From Octopus sinensis (Eukaryota): 64,000 nucleotides of DNA. The notes under the pieces were generated by a model. It had not been told where the DNA came from, did no database searches, and was given only the letters and a program-made list of their open reading frames with translations. The position numbers and the translations under genes were made by a program. Where the stretch lies: NCBI RefSeq assembly GCF_006345805.1, contig NC_043004.1:12152001-12216000 (forward strand), written 5' to 3'. Below are positions 5,867 through 63,900 of the stretch, piece after piece (positions within the stretch are counted from its first letter, which is position 1; every line of letters starts with the position of its first letter).

Positions 5867-6246
5867 TACGCCATTCATCATGGTTCTTTATTATCTCACT
5901 ACAAATATGTCAACAGAACAAAAGAACATTGCTTCGGAACATGAGATATAAAGCTACTGGTCCCATCTACTTTATGTTACCCCTGTTCATTCCTTCATAA
6001 TTTTGCTTTTTTATTTAATATTTTTTGTTTTTTTGCATGAATTTTATTGCTTGATGTCTTTCGCATCACATTCTCTCAATATGGCACCTCTTTGATGCTG
6101 GTGTCAGTTGTATGTGTATGTGTGTTTGTGCATGTCCTTATCTGCATGACTGAAAATGAGCATCATCATCATCATCATCATCATCATACAAGTTCATTTC
6201 CAGTCTTCTGAAAAGAGTGTGTTTGGTTTAGCTGTTAGAAGATATT

Positions 6247-6394
6247 ACATTATTTACATTGTTTACATTTGACCGATATTTGTCCTCATCTTGTTTGTTG
6301 TTAACACAACGTTTCGGCTGATATACCCTCGTTTTGTTAACAACAAACAAGATGAGGACAAATATCTGTCAAATGTAAATAATGTAAACAATGT
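6247..6394. mobile_element. Fold-back remnant of a Penelope-like element (inverted termini)
   Basis: 59-bp inverted arms 6247-6305 and 6336-6394 (3 mismatches); the spacer carries ACGTTTCGGCTG, the 3' half of a hammerhead on the minus strand. Confidence 0.65.
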
Positions 6395-6454
6395 ACATAA
6401 TTCCTGATCTCTTAAATATAGAGCTGGAAGATATTACTTTACATTAGTTATAAT

Positions 6455-32679: not shown

Positions 32680-33245
32680 ATGCCAGTGGCACATAAAAGC
32701 ACCCACTACACTCTTGGACTGGTTGGCGTTAGGAAGGGATCCAGCTGTAGAAACTCTGCCAGATCAAGATTGAAGCCTGGTGCAGCCATCAGTCAAATCG
32801 TCCAACCCATGCTAGCATGGAAAGCGGACATTAAACAATGTCATTTAATGTCCTCTTTCCATGCTGGCATGGGTTGGACTGTTTGACTGAGGACTGGCAA
32901 GCTAGGAGGCTGCTTGAGGCTCCACTACTGGATGCCCTTCCTAACACCAACCACTGCAAGAGTGTAGTGGGTGCTTTTTATGTGTCATTGGCAGGGGAGC
33001 TGGTCAGGGGACACTGGCATCAGCCACATTCAGATGGTGCCTTTTACATGCCACTGGAACAGGAGCCAGTCAAATGGCACTGGCATTGACCACGTTCGCA
33101 TAGTGCTTTTTACATACCACTGGCATGGGGAGCCAGTCAGGTGGCACTAGCATCGACCCATGCTCAAATGGTGCTTATTATGTACCACCAGCAGGGGTGG
33201 CACTGGCCACAGCTATGATTTCGATTGAGTCAACAGGTCTTCTCA
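32680..33245. mobile_element. Tail-to-tail pair of family C elements; minus copy has an internal ~50-bp VNTR
   Basis: GGACATTAAA-CAATGTCA-TTTAATGTCC junction near 32840; repeated GTGCTTTT(T)ACATGCCAC units at 32970-33190. Confidence 0.75.
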
Positions 33246-38029: not shown

Positions 38030-38560
38030 GATTGATTGATTGATTCTAGTTTCAGCTCATGAGCTGTGGCCATGCTGGGGCACCGCCATTTGGTGTTGCT
38101 GCATGGTTTTACTTCACGAAAACTTTTTAGCAACTGTCATTTGGTGCATGAGAGAGTTCGATGCAGCTGCCCTCATCTGCCGTGAAGTTGGTTCATCTGG
38201 GATACCTGACAGGAAGAGATCCAGTTTCATTTTAAAGACATCTGCATCCACCCCATACAGGTCTCTTAGGTTCTTCGGGAGGATATTGAAGAGCTGTGGG
38301 CCTCGGAAGCCCAGGCTATCACAGTATCTTGTCCTACATCTTGATGGCAAATTTGGAGTCCTAGGCACCACGCAGTGGCGCCCAGTTCTGGCATTTGTGT
38401 AACTCTCGATGCCAAAGTTTGGGACAAGTCCCTCCAGGATCTTCCAGATGTATGTTATGGTATATCTTTCCCGCCTACGCTCCAAGGAATATAGTTTTAA
38501 TCTCTTGAGTCTTTCCCAGTAGCTTATATTCTGCATAGAGGCTATCTTCTTCGTGTAGCT
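38030..38560 (-). mobile_element. CR1/L2-group LINE 3' end with an intact 140-codon frame
   Basis: SYWERLKRLKLYSLERRRERY...GPQLFNILP...FKMKLDLFLSGIPDEP; 3' UTR GGCGGTGCCCCAGCATGGCC plus stem-loop; (ATCA)n tail. Confidence 0.9.
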
Positions 38561-38574
38561 ATGTTGGATCGCCT

Positions 38575-39120
38575 TTTATTCTTTTATCTGTTTCAGTCAT
38601 TTGACTGCAGCTATGTGTGGTGCACCACCCTTAGTCAAACAGCTCAACCCCAGGACTTATTCTTTGTAAACCTAGTACTTATTCAATCGATCCCTTTTGC
38701 CGAATCACTAAGTTATGGAAATAAAAAAACACACCAAAATCAGTTATCAAGCGATGAGGGGGGACAAACACAGACACATACATACATACATATATATACA
38801 TACAACGGGCTTCTTTCAGTTTCTGTCTACCAAATCCACTCACAAAGTTTTGGTTGGCCCGAGGCTATAGTAGAAGACACTTACCCAAGGTGCCATGCAG
38901 TGGGACTGAACCCGGAACCATGTGGCTGGTAAGCAAGCTTGTTACCACACAGCCACATCTCCACCCACCATTGCTTGACAACCAGTGTTGATGTGTTTAC
39001 GTCCCTGTAACTTAACAATTCGGCAAAAGAGACTGATAGAATAAGTTTTTGATTTGTTCAAATAAAGGCGGTGCTCCAGCATGGCCAAAGTCAAATGACT
39101 GAATCAAGTAAAAGAGTTAT
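38575..39120. mobile_element. Family A SINE (38575-38960 minus) plus an inverted 3' half (38965-39120 plus)
   Basis: Family A motifs in both orientations. Confidence 0.8.
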
Positions 39121-52113: not shown

Positions 52114-54643
52114 GGAGAGAGAGAGAGAGAGACAGAGAGAGAGAGGCTCACACTCACATATAATCTTATACACACACACACACATTAAAACACAAGCAGA
52201 TACACAAGCATACCACATATCTTTTTCAAAATAATCTGTTGATTTTGAAACTTGGAACTCATGGTTCCAAAGTAATCTTCTTGACCATGGCCTTGTACCT
52301 AATGGATATATACCGTTGTATATATACCATTAAACACACAGAAACAGCAGGCTTCCATACAGTTTCCTTCTGCCATATTTAACACACAAGTCATTGGCCA
52401 TCTCAAGGCTATAGCAGCAGACACTTTGCTCTAGGTGCCATGCCCTGGAACTGAACTCGAACCACTTGGCTGGAAAGCCTGTTTTTAATGACACACACAC
52501 GTGTGTGTGTGTGTGTGGCTGTGTGGTTAAGAAACTTGCTTCCCAACCATGTGATCATGAGTTCAGTTCCACTTCATGACATTTTGGGTGTCTTCTATTG
52601 AAGTTCCAGCCTAATCAAAGCCTTGCAAGTGGATTTGATTCATGGAAACTGAAAGAAGCCCCCCCCTATCATTTTTATGTATATATCATCATTATCATCA
52701 TCATCAACATCATCATTATTGATTATCTCTTTTCCATACTGGCCTGGGTTGGATGGTTTAACTGGAATTGGCAAGTCAAAAGACAGCACCAAGTACATAT
52801 GTGTGTGTGTGTGTGTGTTTTTGTACGTTCACATGTGTGTTTGTTTTTGTTGTATACCCTTGTCTAGGTGTCATGTAGCAACTCCAAATGAGCTTCATTG
52901 TCGTATAAACAGCAGAGTCGTTCATTTGCAAAATAACATGTTTAGTCTTTTGTTAATATTACCTTCCTTGATAAGCAGGTGAAGGTTGGTGATGGGAAAG
53001 GCATCCCACCGTAGAAAATCTACCTCGACAAATTCCGTCTGACCCAATCAAGCACAGAAAAGTCAATGTCAAATGGCGATGAATGTATATGCGTGTAGAT
53101 GTGGGTGTATACATCTGTATAATTGTGTATAGACATTCTCCGCTCTAAACCAACCTACTTTAAATTTCTGACTCTGGAAGAAAATCAATAAATTCTTGAG
53201 AATATATTGATTATTTTAATAAGAGATTTTTTTTTTTTTTCATTTCAAATCACACTAAATCACTTATTTTATTATATTTATTTAATTTTACTTTAATTTG
53301 TTACCCAAATTAACCTTGTGCGTGATTATTGTTTGTGATGCGGTTTTTATAAGTGTTTGTGATGTCGTTTTTATTATAGTCGTATATTAGTTCATTTTCT
53401 TGGAACATAATTATCATGTTTTCTTCTGGCTTTTAATTAAATTGATAAATAGAGTTTAGTTACTGCAGACATTCTTGTGTGATGTCACATACACGCATCG
53501 ATGTAGCCAAGCGATATCAACTGATAAGAGTACAGCAGATGAGATGATGTGGGATACATGTTGAATACCATAGATGAAAGCAGGAGACATGAACTAGATA
53601 GATGACTTCTCTATATGCCATTGTTCTTCTATTTAACCCCGAGTTATTTCTGTCTGGTTAGACTTCGCAGTTTTACATATCGCAACTGCAACTGTGCTGC
53701 ATTCATCTCTGAAGACGGTAAACTGTGTGGTTTTGAGGGAGATTTGGCTGCTATTTCTATCTAGCATATTGACTGGCTTACATAGGGAATCCCTTCTTGA
53801 CTTTGTCATTTGTTGTTGTATGTAGATGTTGTGTGAATATAGATAGTTTGTGTGGTTGTTTTATATTTAGCTTGCTTCAGTCATTGGATTGCAGCCATGC
53901 TGGAGCACCACCTTGAGAGATTTTTTTTTTACTTGAACAAATCGACCCCCAGTACTTTGTTTTTAAATCCGATACATATTTTATCAGGCAGTTTTGCTGA
54001 ACCCCTGGGTTTGGGGATGTAAACAAACCAGCATCAGCTATCAACTAGTTGGATAGGAACAAACACAGGTACACACAAAAAATATATCATCATCATCATC
54101 ATCATCATCATCGTTTAACGTCCACTTTCCATGCTAGCATGGGTTGGACGGTTCAACTGGGCTCTGGGAAGCCAGAAGGCTGCACCAGGCTCCAGTCTGA
54201 TCTGGCAGTGTTTCTACAGCTGGATGCCCTTCCTAATGCCAACCACTCTGTGAGTGTAGTGGATGCTTTTTACGTGCCACCGGCACAGGTGCCAGACAAG
54301 GTTGGCAAACGGCCACGATTGGATGATGCTTTTTATGTGCCACTGACAGTTAAGTATAAAATCTGATCATAGAGTGACCAATAGTCTTGCATCTATAAAG
54401 GACTTAGCTCTATGGATGACTCATCATACTCTAATGCCAAAGGCCATATAATTCTTCAGACTTCAGAGGTAGAAATTCGGTATGGTCAGTTTGTTAGTAT
54501 GTAAACAAGGAATAAATAATGTTGGTTGGCGAGGACAGGTATATCTCCTTTAGACTAGTCCATCTAGGCCAAAAGGTAAACAGGGAACTGTACCCTTAGA
54601 TTGCTTTTAGCTGGTAAGGACCTTTGCAGATTTAATCTGAGAG

Positions 54644-54723
54644 GCTTGCAACAGGTAGCGTTTGAAATGGATGCAGGGGTTATAAATTTCATGTATCCAT
54701 TTCAAAGTCTACCTGCTGCAAGC
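54644..54723. ncRNA. Pre-miRNA-like hairpin, copy 1
   Basis: 15-bp stem, 2x2 internal loop, 15-bp stem, 16-nt terminal loop. Confidence 0.4.
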
Positions 54724-54759
54724 ACTGTTTTTAGCTCCTTTTCAGTTTTAATCTGAGGG

Positions 54760-54840
54760 GCTTGCAACAGGTAGCATTTGAAATGGATGCAGGGGGTTAT
54801 AAATTTCGTGTATCCATTTCAAACACTACCTGCTGCAAGC
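54760..54840. ncRNA. Pre-miRNA-like hairpin, copy 2
   Basis: Same 60 stem nucleotides as copy 1; CCCC (CNNC-type) about 18 nt after the predicted 3' cut on the plus strand. Confidence 0.4.
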
Positions 54841-55257
54841 ACAGGATTCCCCATTCATCAATTGGATCTGGAAAGGTTCGTATGAGCTAAAAGTAACCTA
54901 AGAGTGTTTAAAATCCTTATGGATCTTTTGAGCCTCATTGGTCATGTTTCTCCAGTTTCTGGTTGCTGGTAACACCCTGTGCCATCCATATCCTTGTTGC
55001 GATGATGATTTCTTCTCGAAAATGTACTACAAATATATGGCATCATATCTGGTTTGAATATTTTGAGTAACAGCATTAGTCTACATATAAAATATACAGC
55101 AGTATGAAACATGTGAACAAAAGATGTTAGTTATGACAGTAACAGAGGACAACATGAGATCAGAGAAATAATATGTCTAGTCAATGGATACAAAGACAAA
55201 CAGATAAACAATATTCATGAGAGATGCTTATATAAAAGTTTAGTTAGTTTTATATTT

Positions 55258-56290
55258 GTGAAGGTGCATTGCTCAGTAGTTAGAGCATTGGGCTTACAGT
55301 CGTGAGGTTGTGAGTTCAATTCCTGAACCAAGCTGTATGTTGTGTTCTTGAGCAAGATACTTTATTTTATGTTGTACCAGTTCACTCGGCTATAGAAAAG
55401 AGTAGTAATATCACTGGTGGTGTGTAAAGAGGAGGCTAGTTTGTATGGACAGTTGCTGGTCTTCCATAAACAACCTTTAAGGACTTGTGCTTCGGAGGGT
55501 AACTTTCTAGGTGTAGTCCCAAGGTCATTCATGACTGAAGGGGGTCTTTACATACACACATACATGTACAAATACATAAGCATATGTTCATATATATATA
55601 AATATATCTATAATGTGCATGGCTCAGTGGTTATAGCATCAGACTCACAATCCTGAGGTAGTGTGTTCGATTCCCGAACCGGGCTGTGTTGTGTTCTTGA
55701 GCAAGACACTTTATTTCATGTTGTTCTAGTTCACTCAGCTGTCGGAATGAGTTGTGACGTTACTGTTGCCAAGCTGTATTGGTCTTTGCTTCTCCCTTGG
55801 ACAACATCGGGGGTGTGGAGAGAGGGGATTGGTATGCAATGGCGACTGCTGGTCTTCCATAAACAACCTTGCCTGGACTTGTGCCTTGAAGGGTAACTTT
55901 CTAGGTGCAGTCACATGGTCATTTATGACCAAAGGGGGTCTTTACATACACACATACAAGTACAAATATATATGCATATCTTCACATATACATAGATATA
56001 GTAATATGGTGCATGGCTCAGTGGTTATAGATTCACAATCACGGGGTTGTGAGTTCAATTCCTTGAGCAAGGCTCTTTATTTCACATTGCTCCATTTCAC
56101 CCAGCTTTAGAAATAAATTGCGACATCACTAGTGCCACGCTGTATTAGCCTTTGCTTCTTCCTTGGACAACATCGGTGGCACGGAGAGGGAAAGCTGGTA
56201 TGCATGGGTGACTGCTAGTCTTCCATAAACAACCTTACCCAGACTTGTGTCTTGGAGGGTAACTTTCTGGGTGCAGTCCCATGGTCATTT
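55258..56290 (+). mobile_element. Tandem trimer of a tRNA-derived SINE, family D
   Basis: Copies at about 55258, 55615 and 56007 with head GGTGCATGGCTCAGTGGTTAG and core CTTGAGCAAGACACTTTATTTC; spacers between copies are also homologous. Confidence 0.85.
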
Positions 56291-56334
56291 ACTCTTTTAG
56301 TGTCATATTTAATATCAAAAAGAGATTAATTTGA

Positions 56335-56890
56335 AAGTGGTCAGCTGGCTGGATCGTTAGCTCACAAGTCAAAATGCTTAGCAGCGTTTCATCCATCTTT
56401 AAATTCTGAGTTCAAATTCCACCAAGGGTAACTCTGCCTTTCATCTTTTCGGGGCCAATAAAATAAACATTAGTTCAATCCTGGGGTCGATCTAATTGAT
56501 TTTGTGACTCCCTGAAATTGCTGGCCTTGTACTAAAATTTGAAGCCAATATCCTTTGTTATGGTCACTGGGTTGTGGTCATACTGGAGCACCATTTTGAA
56601 GGATTTAGTCAAGCAAATCAACTCCAGTATCCACTTTAAAGTCTGGTACTTATTCTATTGGTCACCTTCACTGAGCTGCTAAGTTACAGGGATGTAAACA
56701 AACCAGCCATGCACACACACATACACACACACATTGGGCTTTCACACAGTTTCTATCTAACCAAATTCATTCACGTGGTATTTGACGGCCTGAAGCTACA
56801 GTAGAAGACATTTGCCCAAGGTGCCCCTTACTAGGACTGAACCCGAAACTTCATGGTTGCAAAGTAAGCTTCTTAACTGCATAGCCATGT
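56335..56890. mobile_element. Family B SINE (56335-56550 plus) and family A SINE (56570-56890 minus)
   Basis: Family motifs, degenerate. Confidence 0.7.
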
Positions 56891-57399
56891 CTATGTAAGT
56901 GGTGGCTGAGTATTCCAATGACATTTGTGTCTTGAATTGAATTCTTAAATTCTCAGAATCAACACAACACTGTGAAGGGGTAAAGTTGTACTGTTGAATT
57001 GTTACAGGTAAAAATTCATTCAATGGGCTTCAGCACAGTTTCTGTCTCCCTAATTTATCCTTCAGGAAGCTTTGATCAGCCCAATTATAGTAAAAATGAA
57101 AAAGAAAAAAAGAAAAACAGTTACCCTAGATGCTGAGTTGAACCTGGATCTTGGGGATTGAAAATCAAAACTGTTTAACCACCTAACCACAACAGTTTTT
57201 CTATTGCCTAGATGCACAGACACATACAAGCACACTGTGTTATTTTCTCACAAGAATTTACTTACTCTATCTGTCTTTCCCTCTCCCTCTCTCTCCTTCT
57301 TTCTCTCTCTCTCGCCTCTTTTGCCCTCTTCTCTCTCTCCCTCTTTCTCTCATTCATTTACTTACCTGTTCTACCTTTCTCTCAATTGCACACATGAGA

Positions 57400-58038
57400 G
57401 AGATGGATAGTTAGATAGATAGATTGATAGATACACAAGTAGTTAGACAGACAGTCAAGAAGACAGATGGATGGATGGATAGACAGACAGAAGACAGACA
57501 GAGAGACAGACAAATGAGCAAACAGATGGACACAGAATGTTAGATTATCTGACAGATGCAGAGATAAACGTATAATAGATAGCCATATATCCAGTGAAAT
57601 ATAAACTAGCTCAATGGATGGATAGACAGACAGATACAAACGGACAAGTAAATAAGCTGAAAGACATGCAGACACAGATATAGATAGAGACAGACATCTC
57701 CACAGACAGAGAATTCAGGACCAGGAACCAGGCAGACAAACAGACGGAAAGACAGATAGGCTGACATACAAAATTACAGTGACCAGTAAATATAGATGAA
57801 ATAGATCAATATATGGGATTGATAGATAAACAGATAAATAGAAAGACAAATAGAGATAGTATAGAGGAATGCAACAGATAGACGGGTTGAAAGGTACTCA
57901 AAGAAAAATTGATCAATTGATTGATAGATAGATAGACAGAAAGATAGATAAAGGTAGATAGATAGATATATAGATAGATAGATAGATAGATAGAAAGGTA
58001 GGTAGATAGATAGATAGATAGATAAATAAATAGAAAGG

Positions 58039-62229: not shown

Positions 62230-62963
62230 ATGTATATTATGTAAATATGTATACATATATATGTATGTGGTGTGTATGTATGTATGTATGTATGTATGTA
62301 TATATATAATATATACATATATGTGTGGTGTGTATATGTATATATATGTATATATATTTATATATATATATATATATCTGTCCAACCCATGCTAGCATGG
62401 AAAACGGACGCTAAACGATGATGATGATGATGATGATGATATACATATATATATATATATATTATATATATATATATATGTTTATGTATGTATATGTATG
62501 TACATGTATGTATATATATATATATATATATACATATGTTGTAAAGAGTCCACTCTGCAAAGTGGTTGGCATTAGGAAAGACATCCAGTCATAAAAACTA
62601 TGCTAAAACAGACAGTAGAGCTTAGTACAATCCTCTGGTTCAACAGTTCCTCTCAAACCATCAAACCCATTCCAGCATGGAAGACAGATTTTAAATGATA
62701 ATGATGATTGACTGATAGAAAGACAGACAGACAGACAGATACAAATAAGCATGCCAGTGCAAAATAAGGTGGTAAAAATAGTAATTGAATACCAAAGGTA
62801 GTGTAAAATGCAATTTTATTAACGCCGAAAAGAAACTTCGCACACTGTTACTCAAAGATTGAAATAACTTTAATAAATAGACATTTGTGCTAATACAGTG
62901 TGGTAAAAAGAATATTTTAGCTTTCTGTGCACTATAAAATTAATAATTTTTTTTTTTTACTAG

Positions 62964-63080: not shown

Positions 63081-63377
63081 GAGGCGCAATGGCCTAGTGG
63101 TTAGGGCAGCGGTCGCAGGATCGCGGTTTCGATTCCCAGACCGGGCGTTGTGAGTGTTTATTGAGCGAAAACACCTAAAAGCTCCACGAGGTTCTGGCAG
63201 GCGGGGGGTGATCCCTGCTGTACTCTTTCACCACTGTTTCTCCCACTCTTTCTTCTGTTGGCCTGCTCGCTTAGCCAGCGGGGTGGCGTCATTCGAAGGC
63301 TAAAACAATGCGAACGCATTGTGACCAGCGATGTGTAACAACATCTGATGGTCTGGTTGGTCACGTGATCACATGAG

Positions 63378-63378
<1 letters not shown>
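63078..63378 (+). mobile_element. Family E SINE
   Basis: Homologous to 37253-37564; flanked by (TA)n. Confidence 0.85.
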
Positions 63379-63410
<32 letters not shown>

Positions 63411-63900
63411 ATATATGTTTATGTATGTATATGTATGTACATGTATGTATATATATATATATATATATACATATGTTGTAAAGAGTCCACTCTGCAAAGT
63501 GGTTGGCATTAGGAAAGACATCCAGTCATAAAAACTATGCTAAAACAGACAGTAGAGCTTAGTACAATCCTCTGGTTCAACAGTTCCTCTCAAACCATCA
63601 AACCCATTCCAGCATGGAAGACAGATTTTAAATGATAATGATGATTGACTGATAGAAAGACAGACAGACAGACAGATACAAATAAGCATGCCAGTGCAAA
63701 ATAAGGTGGTAAAAATAGTAATTGAATACCAAAGGTAGTGTAAAATGCAATTTTATTAACGCCGAAAAGAAACTTCGCACACTGTTACTCAAAGATTGAA
63801 ATAACTTTAATAAATAGACATTTGTGCTAATACAGTGTGGTAAAAAGAATATTTTAGCTTTCTGTGCACTATAAAATTAATAATTTTTTTTTTTTACTAG

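What the first reader, a model, noticed from the sequence alone, without database searches (positions are those of the whole stretch)
54593..54904. Twin pre-miRNA-like hairpins that differ only at unpaired positions
Seen: two 80/81-nt hairpins 116 bp apart. All 60 stem nucleotides are identical; the 5 differences fall in the internal loop (3) and terminal loop (2), while the duplicated left flank has 3 substitutions and an 8-bp deletion. The predicted 3' arm (G)UAUCCAUUUCAAA[GU/CA]CUACCU keeps its seed and varies only near positions 15-16. Both lie within a more decayed ~39-bp outer inverted repeat. Known: octopus has a large expansion of novel miRNA families, and MITE fold-backs can give rise to miRNAs or hairpin siRNAs. 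Inference: a fold-back element domesticated into a two-member small-RNA cluster. I do not recognise it as a known miRNA, and strand is unresolved (copy 2 gains G-U pairs on the minus strand).
Basis: partly seen in the sequence, partly recalled or inferred. Interest (0 to 1): 0.75.

Follow-up and report, generated by a model that had tools for sequence, protein, structure and literature searches.

The report
Duplicated fold-back hairpins in octopus DNA
A 314-base palindromic stretch of octopus non-coding DNA carries two nearly identical 80-base hairpins that look like microRNA precursors, but such hairpins are common in this genome and nothing available here shows that these two are made into small RNAs.

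Summary
Two hairpins (54644-54723 and 54760-54840) sit 116 bp apart inside a decayed outer inverted repeat (54592-54905). They fold far better than shuffles (z -9 to -11) and have identical paired bases. They arose when a 116-125 bp piece of one long fold-back was duplicated in tandem.

Any mutation in a stem creates an "unpaired" site, so the argument is partly circular. The shared internal loop is probably a former CG/CG rung. Three of the five differences are CpG/CpA transitions and one is a G-run indel. Stem conservation then has p of about 0.002-0.1, depending on assumptions. There is no compensatory change.

Some evidence favours a microRNA reading. The inner stem diverged less than the flanks in both epochs (combined p about 0.008). 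The + strand has a UG at -14 and a CNNC near +16-18 at both hairpins. No other copy was found in 210 kb of octopus DNA, whereas a control fold-back from the same window was found three times.

Other evidence counts against it. Comparable hairpins occur about once per 26 kb. No Rfam family matches, and I found no published sequence match. Expression, cross-species conservation and genome copy number could not be tested.

Verdict: a real fold-back. The microRNA status is plausible but unproven.

The parts
54592..54643 (.). Left arm of the outer, decayed inverted repeat. It runs directly into the 5' arm of hairpin 1.
   Evidence: the repeat finder I1 gives 54592-54636 versus 54861-54905, 45 nt, 78% complementary. 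A gapped alignment of the left half against the reverse complement of the right half extends the pairing up to the hairpin.
54601..54725 (.). Tandem-duplication unit 1: part of the outer left arm plus hairpin 1.
   Evidence: Local alignment of unit 1 with unit 2 shows 4 flank substitutions, an 8-nt indel, and 4 substitutions plus 1 indel in the hairpin.
54644..54723 (+). Hairpin 1, 80 nt. It has 32-nt arms with an A54651/C54716 mismatch, a 2x2 internal loop (C54659 G54660 / G54707 U54708) and a G54673-U54694 wobble. The loop is 16 nt.
   Evidence: RNAfold gives -48.9 kcal/mol, z -9.0 on the + strand, and -43.4, z -9.2 on the - strand. The covariance model scores it at 102 bits.
54726..54842 (.). 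Tandem-duplication unit 2. The spacer 54726-54759 is a copy of the outer left arm lacking 8 nt, followed by hairpin 2.
   Evidence: (families D1 and D2, 93-94% identity).
54760..54840 (+). Hairpin 2, 81 nt. It has the same stem as hairpin 1, an internal loop of CA/CA and a 17-nt loop. On the - strand the internal loop becomes two G-U pairs.
   Evidence: RNAfold gives -49.7 kcal/mol, z -9.9 on the + strand, and -47.1, z -10.9 on the - strand.
54841..54905 (.). Right arm of the outer inverted repeat.
   Evidence: In the whole-element folds it pairs with 54592-54643.
54346..55250 (.). Unique-sequence block that holds the fold-back, bounded by SINE-type repeats on both sides.
   Evidence: Self-BLAST of 52500-57500 against the window found no hits outside the element for 54346-54591 and 54906-55250. 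The neighbouring segments hit up to 35 places.

Best explanation
This is a single-locus fold-back: a long inverted repeat of about 200 bp, of transposon or local inverted-duplication origin. Its core, together with part of its left arm, was later copied once in tandem (54601-54725 to 54726-54842), most simply by replication slippage at the palindrome.

The twin pre-miRNA-like hairpins are a consequence of that DNA history, not a demonstrated gene. The pattern of differences comes mostly from hypermutable sites: CpG decay at the one CG/CG rung and in the loop, plus slippage in a G-run, among only 8 substitutions in total.

If a transcript crosses the locus it will fold. It would form either two 33-35 bp hairpins on a 45-bp outer stem or one nested duplex of about 150 bp. 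It would then be a potential Drosha, Dicer or ADAR substrate. That makes it at most a proto-miRNA, not an established, selected miRNA pair.

Shown: the architecture, the duplication, the folding and the mutational spectrum. Inferred: neutrality and the slippage mechanism.
For: **Architecture**
- The element reads outer arm, hairpin, copy of outer arm, hairpin, outer arm.
- The outer stem runs without a break into hairpin 1. The twin-hairpin and nested folds are isoenergetic: -159.6 versus -159.9 kcal/mol on the + strand, and -137.1 versus -139.0 on the - strand.

**Mutational spectrum**
- Of the 5 hairpin differences, 3 are CpG/CpA transitions and 1 is a G-run indel. The window has CpG observed/expected of 0.37, so CpG decays here.
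- With the rung counted as stem, there is no excess conservation (p = 0.24). With CpG weighted 10-20 times, P(no change in the 60 stem nt) is 0.03-0.12.
- There is no compensatory pair change.

**Background**
- Complex-sequence hairpins with arms of at least 26 nt and at least 85% complementarity are common. There are 3 loci in this 64-kb window and 5 in 146 kb of Octopus vulgaris DNA, about one per 26 kb. Only 164 miRNA genes are annotated in O. vulgaris (PMC9699675).
- Another recent local tandem duplication lies in the same window, at 62436/63373 (99% identity).

**Known families**
- No Rfam family reaches threshold. The best hit is mir-556 at 28.6 bits against a cut-off of 84.
- TGCTACCT, the site for one predicted 5p start, is listed as a non-seed k-mer in the O. 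vulgaris target table.
Against: - The 60 paired bases have no change, while the 35-nt co-duplicated flank has 4 substitutions and an 8-nt deletion (Fisher p = 0.016).
- The inner arms also differ from each other less (2/30) than the outer arms do (10/45, p = 0.066). The two tests combined give p = 0.008.
- One internal-loop change (CG to GT) is not a CpG transition.
- Both hairpins have a UG at -14 and a CNNC at +15 to +18 on the + strand only. Background rates in the window are 0.078 and 0.106.
- No second copy was found in 210 kb, and there is no target-site duplication, so a transposon origin is not demonstrated.
Confidence: 0.45

Rival explanations
1. The locus is a genuine, young, lineage-restricted pair of miRNA genes transcribed from the + strand. 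Each hairpin would be cut by Drosha about 11 bp above its base and then by Dicer. That would give roughly CAGGUAGC(G/A)UUUGAAAUGGAUG (5p) and (UA)UCCAUUUCAAA(GU/CA)CUACCUG (3p). The seed would be shared by the two copies, and purifying selection on the stem would have followed the duplication.
For: - The stem is 32-34 bp in an 80-81 nt hairpin, with a few mismatches.
- There are no changes in the 60 paired nt, against 4/35 in the co-duplicated flank (p = 0.016), or 8/55 for all unpaired sites (p = 0.002).
- The inner arms are better kept than the outer arms. The combined p is 0.008.
- Both hairpins have a UG at -14 and a CNNC at +15 to +18 on the + strand and not on the - strand.
- The locus lies in unique sequence, with no other copy in 210 kb. 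A control fold-back family was found 3 times in the same sample.
- Octopuses have about 90 novel miRNA families, and the authors say their count is an underestimate (PMC9699675).
Against: - The prior is low: about 1 comparable hairpin per 26 kb.
- The tests were chosen after seeing the data and rest on 8 substitutions. CpG decay explains much of the pattern.
- There is no compensatory change.
- The stem is nearly perfect and continues into a 45-bp outer stem, so there is no clear single-stranded basal junction at hairpin 1.
- No Rfam match and no literature match were found.
- There is no expression or conservation evidence.
Confidence: 0.35
2. The whole 314-nt element acts as one long hairpin RNA. 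The nested duplex of about 150 bp would be diced into heterogeneous endo-siRNAs, or heavily A-to-I edited by ADAR, and would not yield two defined miRNAs.
For: - The minimum-free-energy fold of 54580-54915 is a single nested fold-back on both strands: -159.9 and -139.0 kcal/mol, z -14.7 and -13.0.
- Hairpin 1's 5' arm pairs with hairpin 2's 3' arm at 91%, better than within either hairpin (88%).
- Tandemly repeated inverted repeats are the architecture of Drosophila hpRNA loci. This is my own knowledge; PMC10317233 was listed but I did not read it.
Against: - The twin-hairpin fold is isoenergetic, and folding during transcription would favour it.
- The outer stem is only 78% complementary.
- I know of no established hpRNA pathway in molluscs.
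- No sequence in the window resembles the arms enough to be a target.
Confidence: 0.1
3. The element is one copy of a dispersed MITE or fold-back transposon family. Its stems stay alike because the copies are young or are homogenised by gene conversion.
For: - It has terminal inverted repeats, is small (314 bp) and has no coding capacity.
- An unrelated fold-back in the same window (6246-6395) does belong to a dispersed family. Such elements therefore exist in this genome.
Against: - No other copy was found in the 64-kb window or in 146 kb of O. vulgaris DNA, by BLAST with word size 9 or by a covariance model.
- There is no direct repeat at the element ends.
- No predicted protein in the 5.8-billion-sequence collection contains a translation of the hairpin.
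- The sample only excludes roughly more than 40,000 copies per genome. That bound is my extrapolation for a genome of about 2.7 Gb.
Confidence: 0.07

Closest known systems
Human hsa-mir-548 genes derived from Made1 MITEs (Piriyapongsa & Jordan 2007, PMC1784062)
   Same: Both are 80-bp near-perfect palindromes of the size of a pre-miRNA. Made1 has two 37-bp inverted repeats around 6 bp. Here there are two 32-nt arms around 16-17 nt.
   Different: - Made1 has many dispersed copies, whereas no second locus was found here.
- There is no sequence or Rfam similarity to mir-548.
- mir-548 has sequenced mature products, and this locus has none known.
- This element also has an extra decayed outer repeat and an internal tandem duplication.
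Octopus and coleoid novel miRNA families (Zolotarov et al. 2022, PMC9699675; MirGeneDB)
   Same: The genus is the same, since the SINE ORF matches Octopus vulgaris proteins. The hairpin size class is the same, and so is the possibility of two-paralogue families: 94 genes fall in 90 novel families.
   Different: - Those families were accepted only with small-RNA reads and presence in a second octopus species. Neither could be tested here.
- The candidate seed-site k-mers are absent from the held (truncated) target tables, and TGCTACCT is listed as non-seed.
Drosophila hairpin-RNA (hpRNA) endo-siRNA loci
   Same: Both are long inverted repeats with tandemly repeated units, able to fold into one long duplex.
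   Different: hpRNAs are longer, target identifiable genes and depend on Dicer-2/Loqs-PD. This is from my own knowledge and from the abstracts listed. No target or pathway evidence exists here.
The dispersed fold-back at window 6246-6395 (same window)
   Same: It is also a complex-sequence, near-perfect hairpin in octopus non-coding DNA.
   Different: It has 66-nt arms, flanking direct repeats (GAAGATATTAC), and three further copies in 146 kb of O. vulgaris DNA. The finding's element has none of these.

Membership tests
Animal miRNA gene (MirGeneDB-style criteria) | Hairpin with at least 16 complementary nucleotides between two ~22-nt arms and a loop of about 8 nt or more | tested here: met
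   29 of 32 rungs pair in both copies, and the loops are 16-17 nt. On the + strand the loop can close further to 3 nt.
Animal miRNA gene (MirGeneDB-style criteria) | 20-26 nt reads from both arms with 2-nt 3' offsets and uniform 5' ends | not testable with these tools
   No small-RNA read data are reachable.
Animal miRNA gene (MirGeneDB-style criteria) | Presence in a second species (the criterion used for octopus novel families, PMC9699675) | not testable with these tools
   - No cephalopod genome can be searched by DNA.
- ORF-based look-ups found nothing.
- The metagenome and prokaryote scans gave only chance matches.
Animal miRNA gene (MirGeneDB-style criteria) | Match to a described miRNA family | tested here: not met
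   - Rfam 15 has no match at gathering score. The best is mir-556 at 28.6 bits against 84, and it is structural only.
- No sequence match in the searchable literature or in the held supplements.
- MirGeneDB itself could not be searched.
Animal miRNA gene (MirGeneDB-style criteria) | Microprocessor motifs: basal UG at -14 and CNNC at +16 to +18 | tested here: inconclusive
   - + strand: UG at -14 in both hairpins for a cut 8 nt into the arm. CNNC lies at +18 (hairpin 1) and at +15 to +18 (hairpin 2).
- - strand: both motifs are lacking.
- Background rates are 0.078 and 0.106.
- The UG is shared by descent, and several cut offsets were tried.
Animal miRNA gene (MirGeneDB-style criteria) | Covariation or purifying selection on the stem | tested here: inconclusive
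   No compensatory changes. Stem versus flank p ranges from 0.002 to 0.24, depending on how the CpG rung is treated.
MITE / fold-back transposon | Terminal inverted repeats, small size and no coding capacity | tested here: met
   The outer repeat is 45 nt at 78%. The element is 314 bp, and only 25-51 aa chance ORFs cross it.
MITE / fold-back transposon | Target-site duplication flanking the inverted repeats | tested here: not met
   The flanks are ...GGGAACTGT on the left and GTTTAAAATCC... on the right, with no direct repeat at any plausible boundary.
MITE / fold-back transposon | Many dispersed copies in the genome | tested here: inconclusive
   No copies in 64 kb plus 146 kb, by BLAST and by covariance model. 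The control family from 6246-6395 gave 3 hits. The sample is only about 0.008% of a ~2.7 Gb genome.
hpRNA / endo-siRNA locus | Long, near-perfect intramolecular duplex | tested here: met
   The nested fold of 336 nt is -159.9 kcal/mol with z -14.7. The outer part is only 78% paired.
hpRNA / endo-siRNA locus | 21-nt Dicer-dependent siRNAs and an identifiable target gene | not testable with these tools
   No reads are available, and there is no arm-like sequence elsewhere in the window.

The most novel reading that the evidence does not exclude
The locus is a species- or genus-restricted two-gene miRNA cluster caught early in its birth. A fold-back duplicated its core, the inner 33-bp stems came under selection while the outer repeat decays, and the two copies share a seed but differ at 3p positions about 12-16. 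It would be a documented case in octopus of the fold-back-to-miRNA route, and a candidate addition to the octopus miRNA expansion.
Probability: 0.3. Interest if true: 0.5.

Novelty: new member of a known kind. Interest (0 to 1): 0.3.

Why it matters
Octopuses have the largest known invertebrate gain of miRNA families, and how those genes arose is not settled. A fold-back whose core hairpin has been duplicated and kept intact would be a concrete example of one birth route. If it is only a decaying palindrome, it is ordinary. It would then be one of roughly 100,000 comparable hairpins in the genome (my extrapolation from 8 in 210 kb). It would also be a useful warning that 'differences only at unpaired sites' is partly circular for hairpins born as perfect inverted repeats.

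Tried and rejected
- **Rfam.** I scanned the locus at E <= 10 and the whole window at gathering score. Only sub-threshold structural hits appeared (mir-556, mir-103).
- **Literature.** I searched for 12-15-mers of both arms as DNA and as RNA. There were no hits, or only chance primer matches. A search for MirGeneDB-style octopus names found no papers.
- **Supplements of PMC9699675.** They hold no miRNA sequences (the let-7 sequence is absent). The candidate seed-site 7-mers are absent from the truncated tables.
- **Exact-protein and homology look-ups** with ORFs that cross or adjoin the hairpins found nothing.
- **A chimeric query of five of the window's longer ORFs** (four without obvious repeat character plus the LINE remnant) returned only LINE reverse transcriptases. 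No host gene was identified, and no orthologous locus could be fetched.
- **Pattern scans.**
  - JGI metagenomes gave 0 hits, then one unrelated GC-rich bacterial hairpin.
  - The GTDB genomes gave one chance match inside a Ferruginibacter coding region.
- **Covariance model of the hairpins** over 210 kb found only the four self-matches and one unrelated palindrome in L008.
- **Strand of transcription from base skews:** no consistent skew.
- **tRNA scan:** none found.
- **Target-site duplication and known terminal-repeat motifs** at the element ends: none convincing.
Full report
**1. What is in the sequence**

The window is AT-rich (36% GC), CpG-depleted (observed/expected 0.37) and full of TA/CA microsatellites, SINE copies and LINE remnants. 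A SINE-derived ORF just upstream of the finding matches eight proteins, seven of which are 'hypothetical predicted proteins' of Octopus vulgaris and one an unnamed ENA protein. A LINE reverse-transcriptase remnant matches, among others, proteins of the octopod Argonauta hians, plus a Logan assembly contig whose organism is not given.

At the stated coordinates there are two hairpins, 54644-54723 (80 nt) and 54760-54840 (81 nt), with starts 116 bp apart. Each has two 32-nt arms around a 16- or 17-nt loop. On either strand they fold far better than dinucleotide shuffles: -43 to -50 kcal/mol, z -9.0 to -10.9, 0 of 200 shuffles as good.

They differ at exactly five positions:
- one on the 5' side of a 2x2 internal loop;
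- two adjacent bases on its 3' side;
- one base in the terminal loop;
- one extra G in a G-run in the terminal loop.

All 29 paired rungs are identical. An outer inverted repeat (54592-54636 / 54861-54905, 78% complementary) encloses both hairpins. I count four substitutions in the duplicated left flank, not three, because the duplication starts at 54601.

**2. How the structure arose**

Aligning the left half with the reverse complement of the right half shows one long palindrome. The outer arm runs straight into the inner arm. Aligning the two units shows that 54601-54725 (part of the outer left arm plus the core hairpin) was copied once in tandem, giving 54726-54842. The order is therefore outer-left, hairpin 1, copy of outer-left (minus 8 nt), hairpin 2, outer-right.

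A transcript of the whole element has two equally good folds. One is two hairpins on a 45-bp outer stem. The other is a single nested duplex in which hairpin 1's 5' arm pairs with hairpin 2's 3' arm. The energies are -159.6 versus -159.9 kcal/mol on the + strand, and -137.1 versus -139.0 on the - strand.

**3. How strong is 'differences only at unpaired positions'?**

Taken at face value, 8 substitutions all falling outside the 60 paired bases has p = 0.002. The argument is partly circular, however. In a hairpin born as a perfect inverted repeat, every later mutation creates an unpaired site.

The four arms at the internal loop read CG, CA, AC and TG (3' arms read as reverse complement). This is what a former CG/CG rung would look like after decay.
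- Both changes in hairpin 2 are CpG transitions.
- The terminal-loop substitution is also CpG/CpA.
- The indel is in a homopolymer.
- Only the CG to GT change in hairpin 1 is not of a hypermutable type.

If the rung is counted as stem, the distribution is unremarkable (p = 0.24). If CpG sites are set aside, 0/60 stem against 4/35 flank gives p = 0.016, or 0.038 against flank plus loop. If CpG sites mutate 10-20 times faster, the chance of no stem change is 0.03-0.12.

A second, independent comparison points the same way. The inner arms differ from each other at 2 of 30 non-rung positions, and the outer arms at 10 of 45 (p = 0.066). The two tests combined give p = 0.008. There is not one compensatory change, so there is no covariation evidence. 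I read this as suggestive, not decisive, evidence that the inner stem evolves more slowly than its surroundings.

**4. Other evidence for or against a small-RNA gene**

For:
- The stem length (32 bp plus 2 basal pairs) and hairpin size are those of a pri-miRNA hairpin.
- On the + strand both hairpins have a UG at -14 and a CNNC at +15 to +18 relative to a Drosha cut 8-11 nt into the arm. The - strand has neither. Window background rates are 0.078 and 0.106.
- The two CNNCs lie in non-homologous 3' flanks and so are independent. The UG is inherited. This tips the strand question towards +.

Against:
- No Rfam family reaches threshold. The best hit, mir-556, scores 28.6 bits against a cut-off of 84 and matches on structure only.
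- No arm sequence appears in the searchable literature or in the held supplements of the octopus miRNA paper. Those supplements do not carry miRNA sequences and are truncated.
- One predicted 5p start (AGGUAGCA, site TGCTACCT) is explicitly listed there as a non-seed k-mer.
- That paper accepted novel families only with reads and with presence in a second octopus species. It found 164 genes, 94 of them in 90 novel families.

**5. Is it a dispersed repeat?**

The element has no other copy in the 64-kb window, where SINE segments recur up to 35 times. It lies in a 900-bp unique block.

I could not search a cephalopod genome by DNA. Instead I fetched 143 kb around seven O. vulgaris genes plus a 3-kb Logan contig, about 146 kb in all. 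BLAST and a covariance model of the hairpins found no further copy. The only extra model hit is an unrelated palindrome.

As a positive control, another fold-back from the same window (6246-6395) was found three times in that sample. The finding's element is therefore not a very high-copy family. A family of a few thousand copies would still have been missed. No target-site duplication flanks it.

**6. Background rate**

Complex-sequence hairpins with arms of at least 26 nt, at least 85% complementarity and loops of at most 40 nt occur at 3 loci in the window and 5 in the 146-kb sample. That is about one per 26 kb, or on the order of 100,000 per genome by my extrapolation, against 164 annotated miRNA genes. 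A strong hairpin alone therefore says little. What sets this one apart is its pre-miRNA size, the retained duplicate, the unique context and the + strand motifs.

**7. Verdict**

The feature is real. It is best described as a fold-back whose core was duplicated in tandem. My probabilities are:
- about 0.45 for a neutrally decaying palindrome, at most a proto-miRNA;
- about 0.35 for a genuine young + strand miRNA pair;
- about 0.10 for a long hairpin RNA that serves as a siRNA or ADAR substrate;
- about 0.07 for one copy of a dispersed MITE family.

The decisive data are small-RNA reads, orthologous loci and genome copy number. They exist publicly but are out of reach of these tools.

Noticed in passing
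window 6246-6395: A 150-nt fold-back with 66-nt arms (62/66 complementary) and an 18-nt loop, flanked by the direct repeat GAAGATATTAC (6240-6250 and 6429-6439). It has three further copies in 146 kb of O. vulgaris DNA (L008 12011-12091, L008 12423-12499, L003 13102-13131), so it is a dispersed MITE-like family.
   Followed up: partly
window 32789-32890: A hairpin with 47-nt arms (43/47) and an 8-nt loop, made of SINE sequence in inverted orientation.
   Followed up: no
window 62436-62735 and 63373-63672: A direct repeat of at least 300 nt at 99% identity with a 937-bp period. It is either a very recent local tandem duplication or an assembly duplication.
   Followed up: no
window 38117-38575 (-): C-terminal remnant of a LINE reverse transcriptase. 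It is 77% identical to a full-length RT/endonuclease protein on a Logan contig (SRR20902413) and 63-66% identical to Argonauta hians proteins.
   Followed up: partly
window 54049-54363 and 55396-56110: SINE-type repeats flank the unique block that holds the fold-back. The upstream one has a His-run ORF that matches mainly O. vulgaris 'hypothetical predicted proteins', which suggests that annotation calls SINE ORFs as genes.
   Followed up: partly
L008 14342-14418 (O. vulgaris OX597816.1): An unrelated ~76-nt palindromic hairpin, picked up on both strands by the covariance model at 18-19 bits. It is another example of how common pre-miRNA-sized palindromes are in this genome.
   Followed up: partly
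window 54727-54735: A T5 run lies 6 nt after hairpin 1 on the + strand, and T4 runs lie in the spacer. These would stop RNA polymerase III but not polymerase II. Their relevance is unknown.
   Followed up: no
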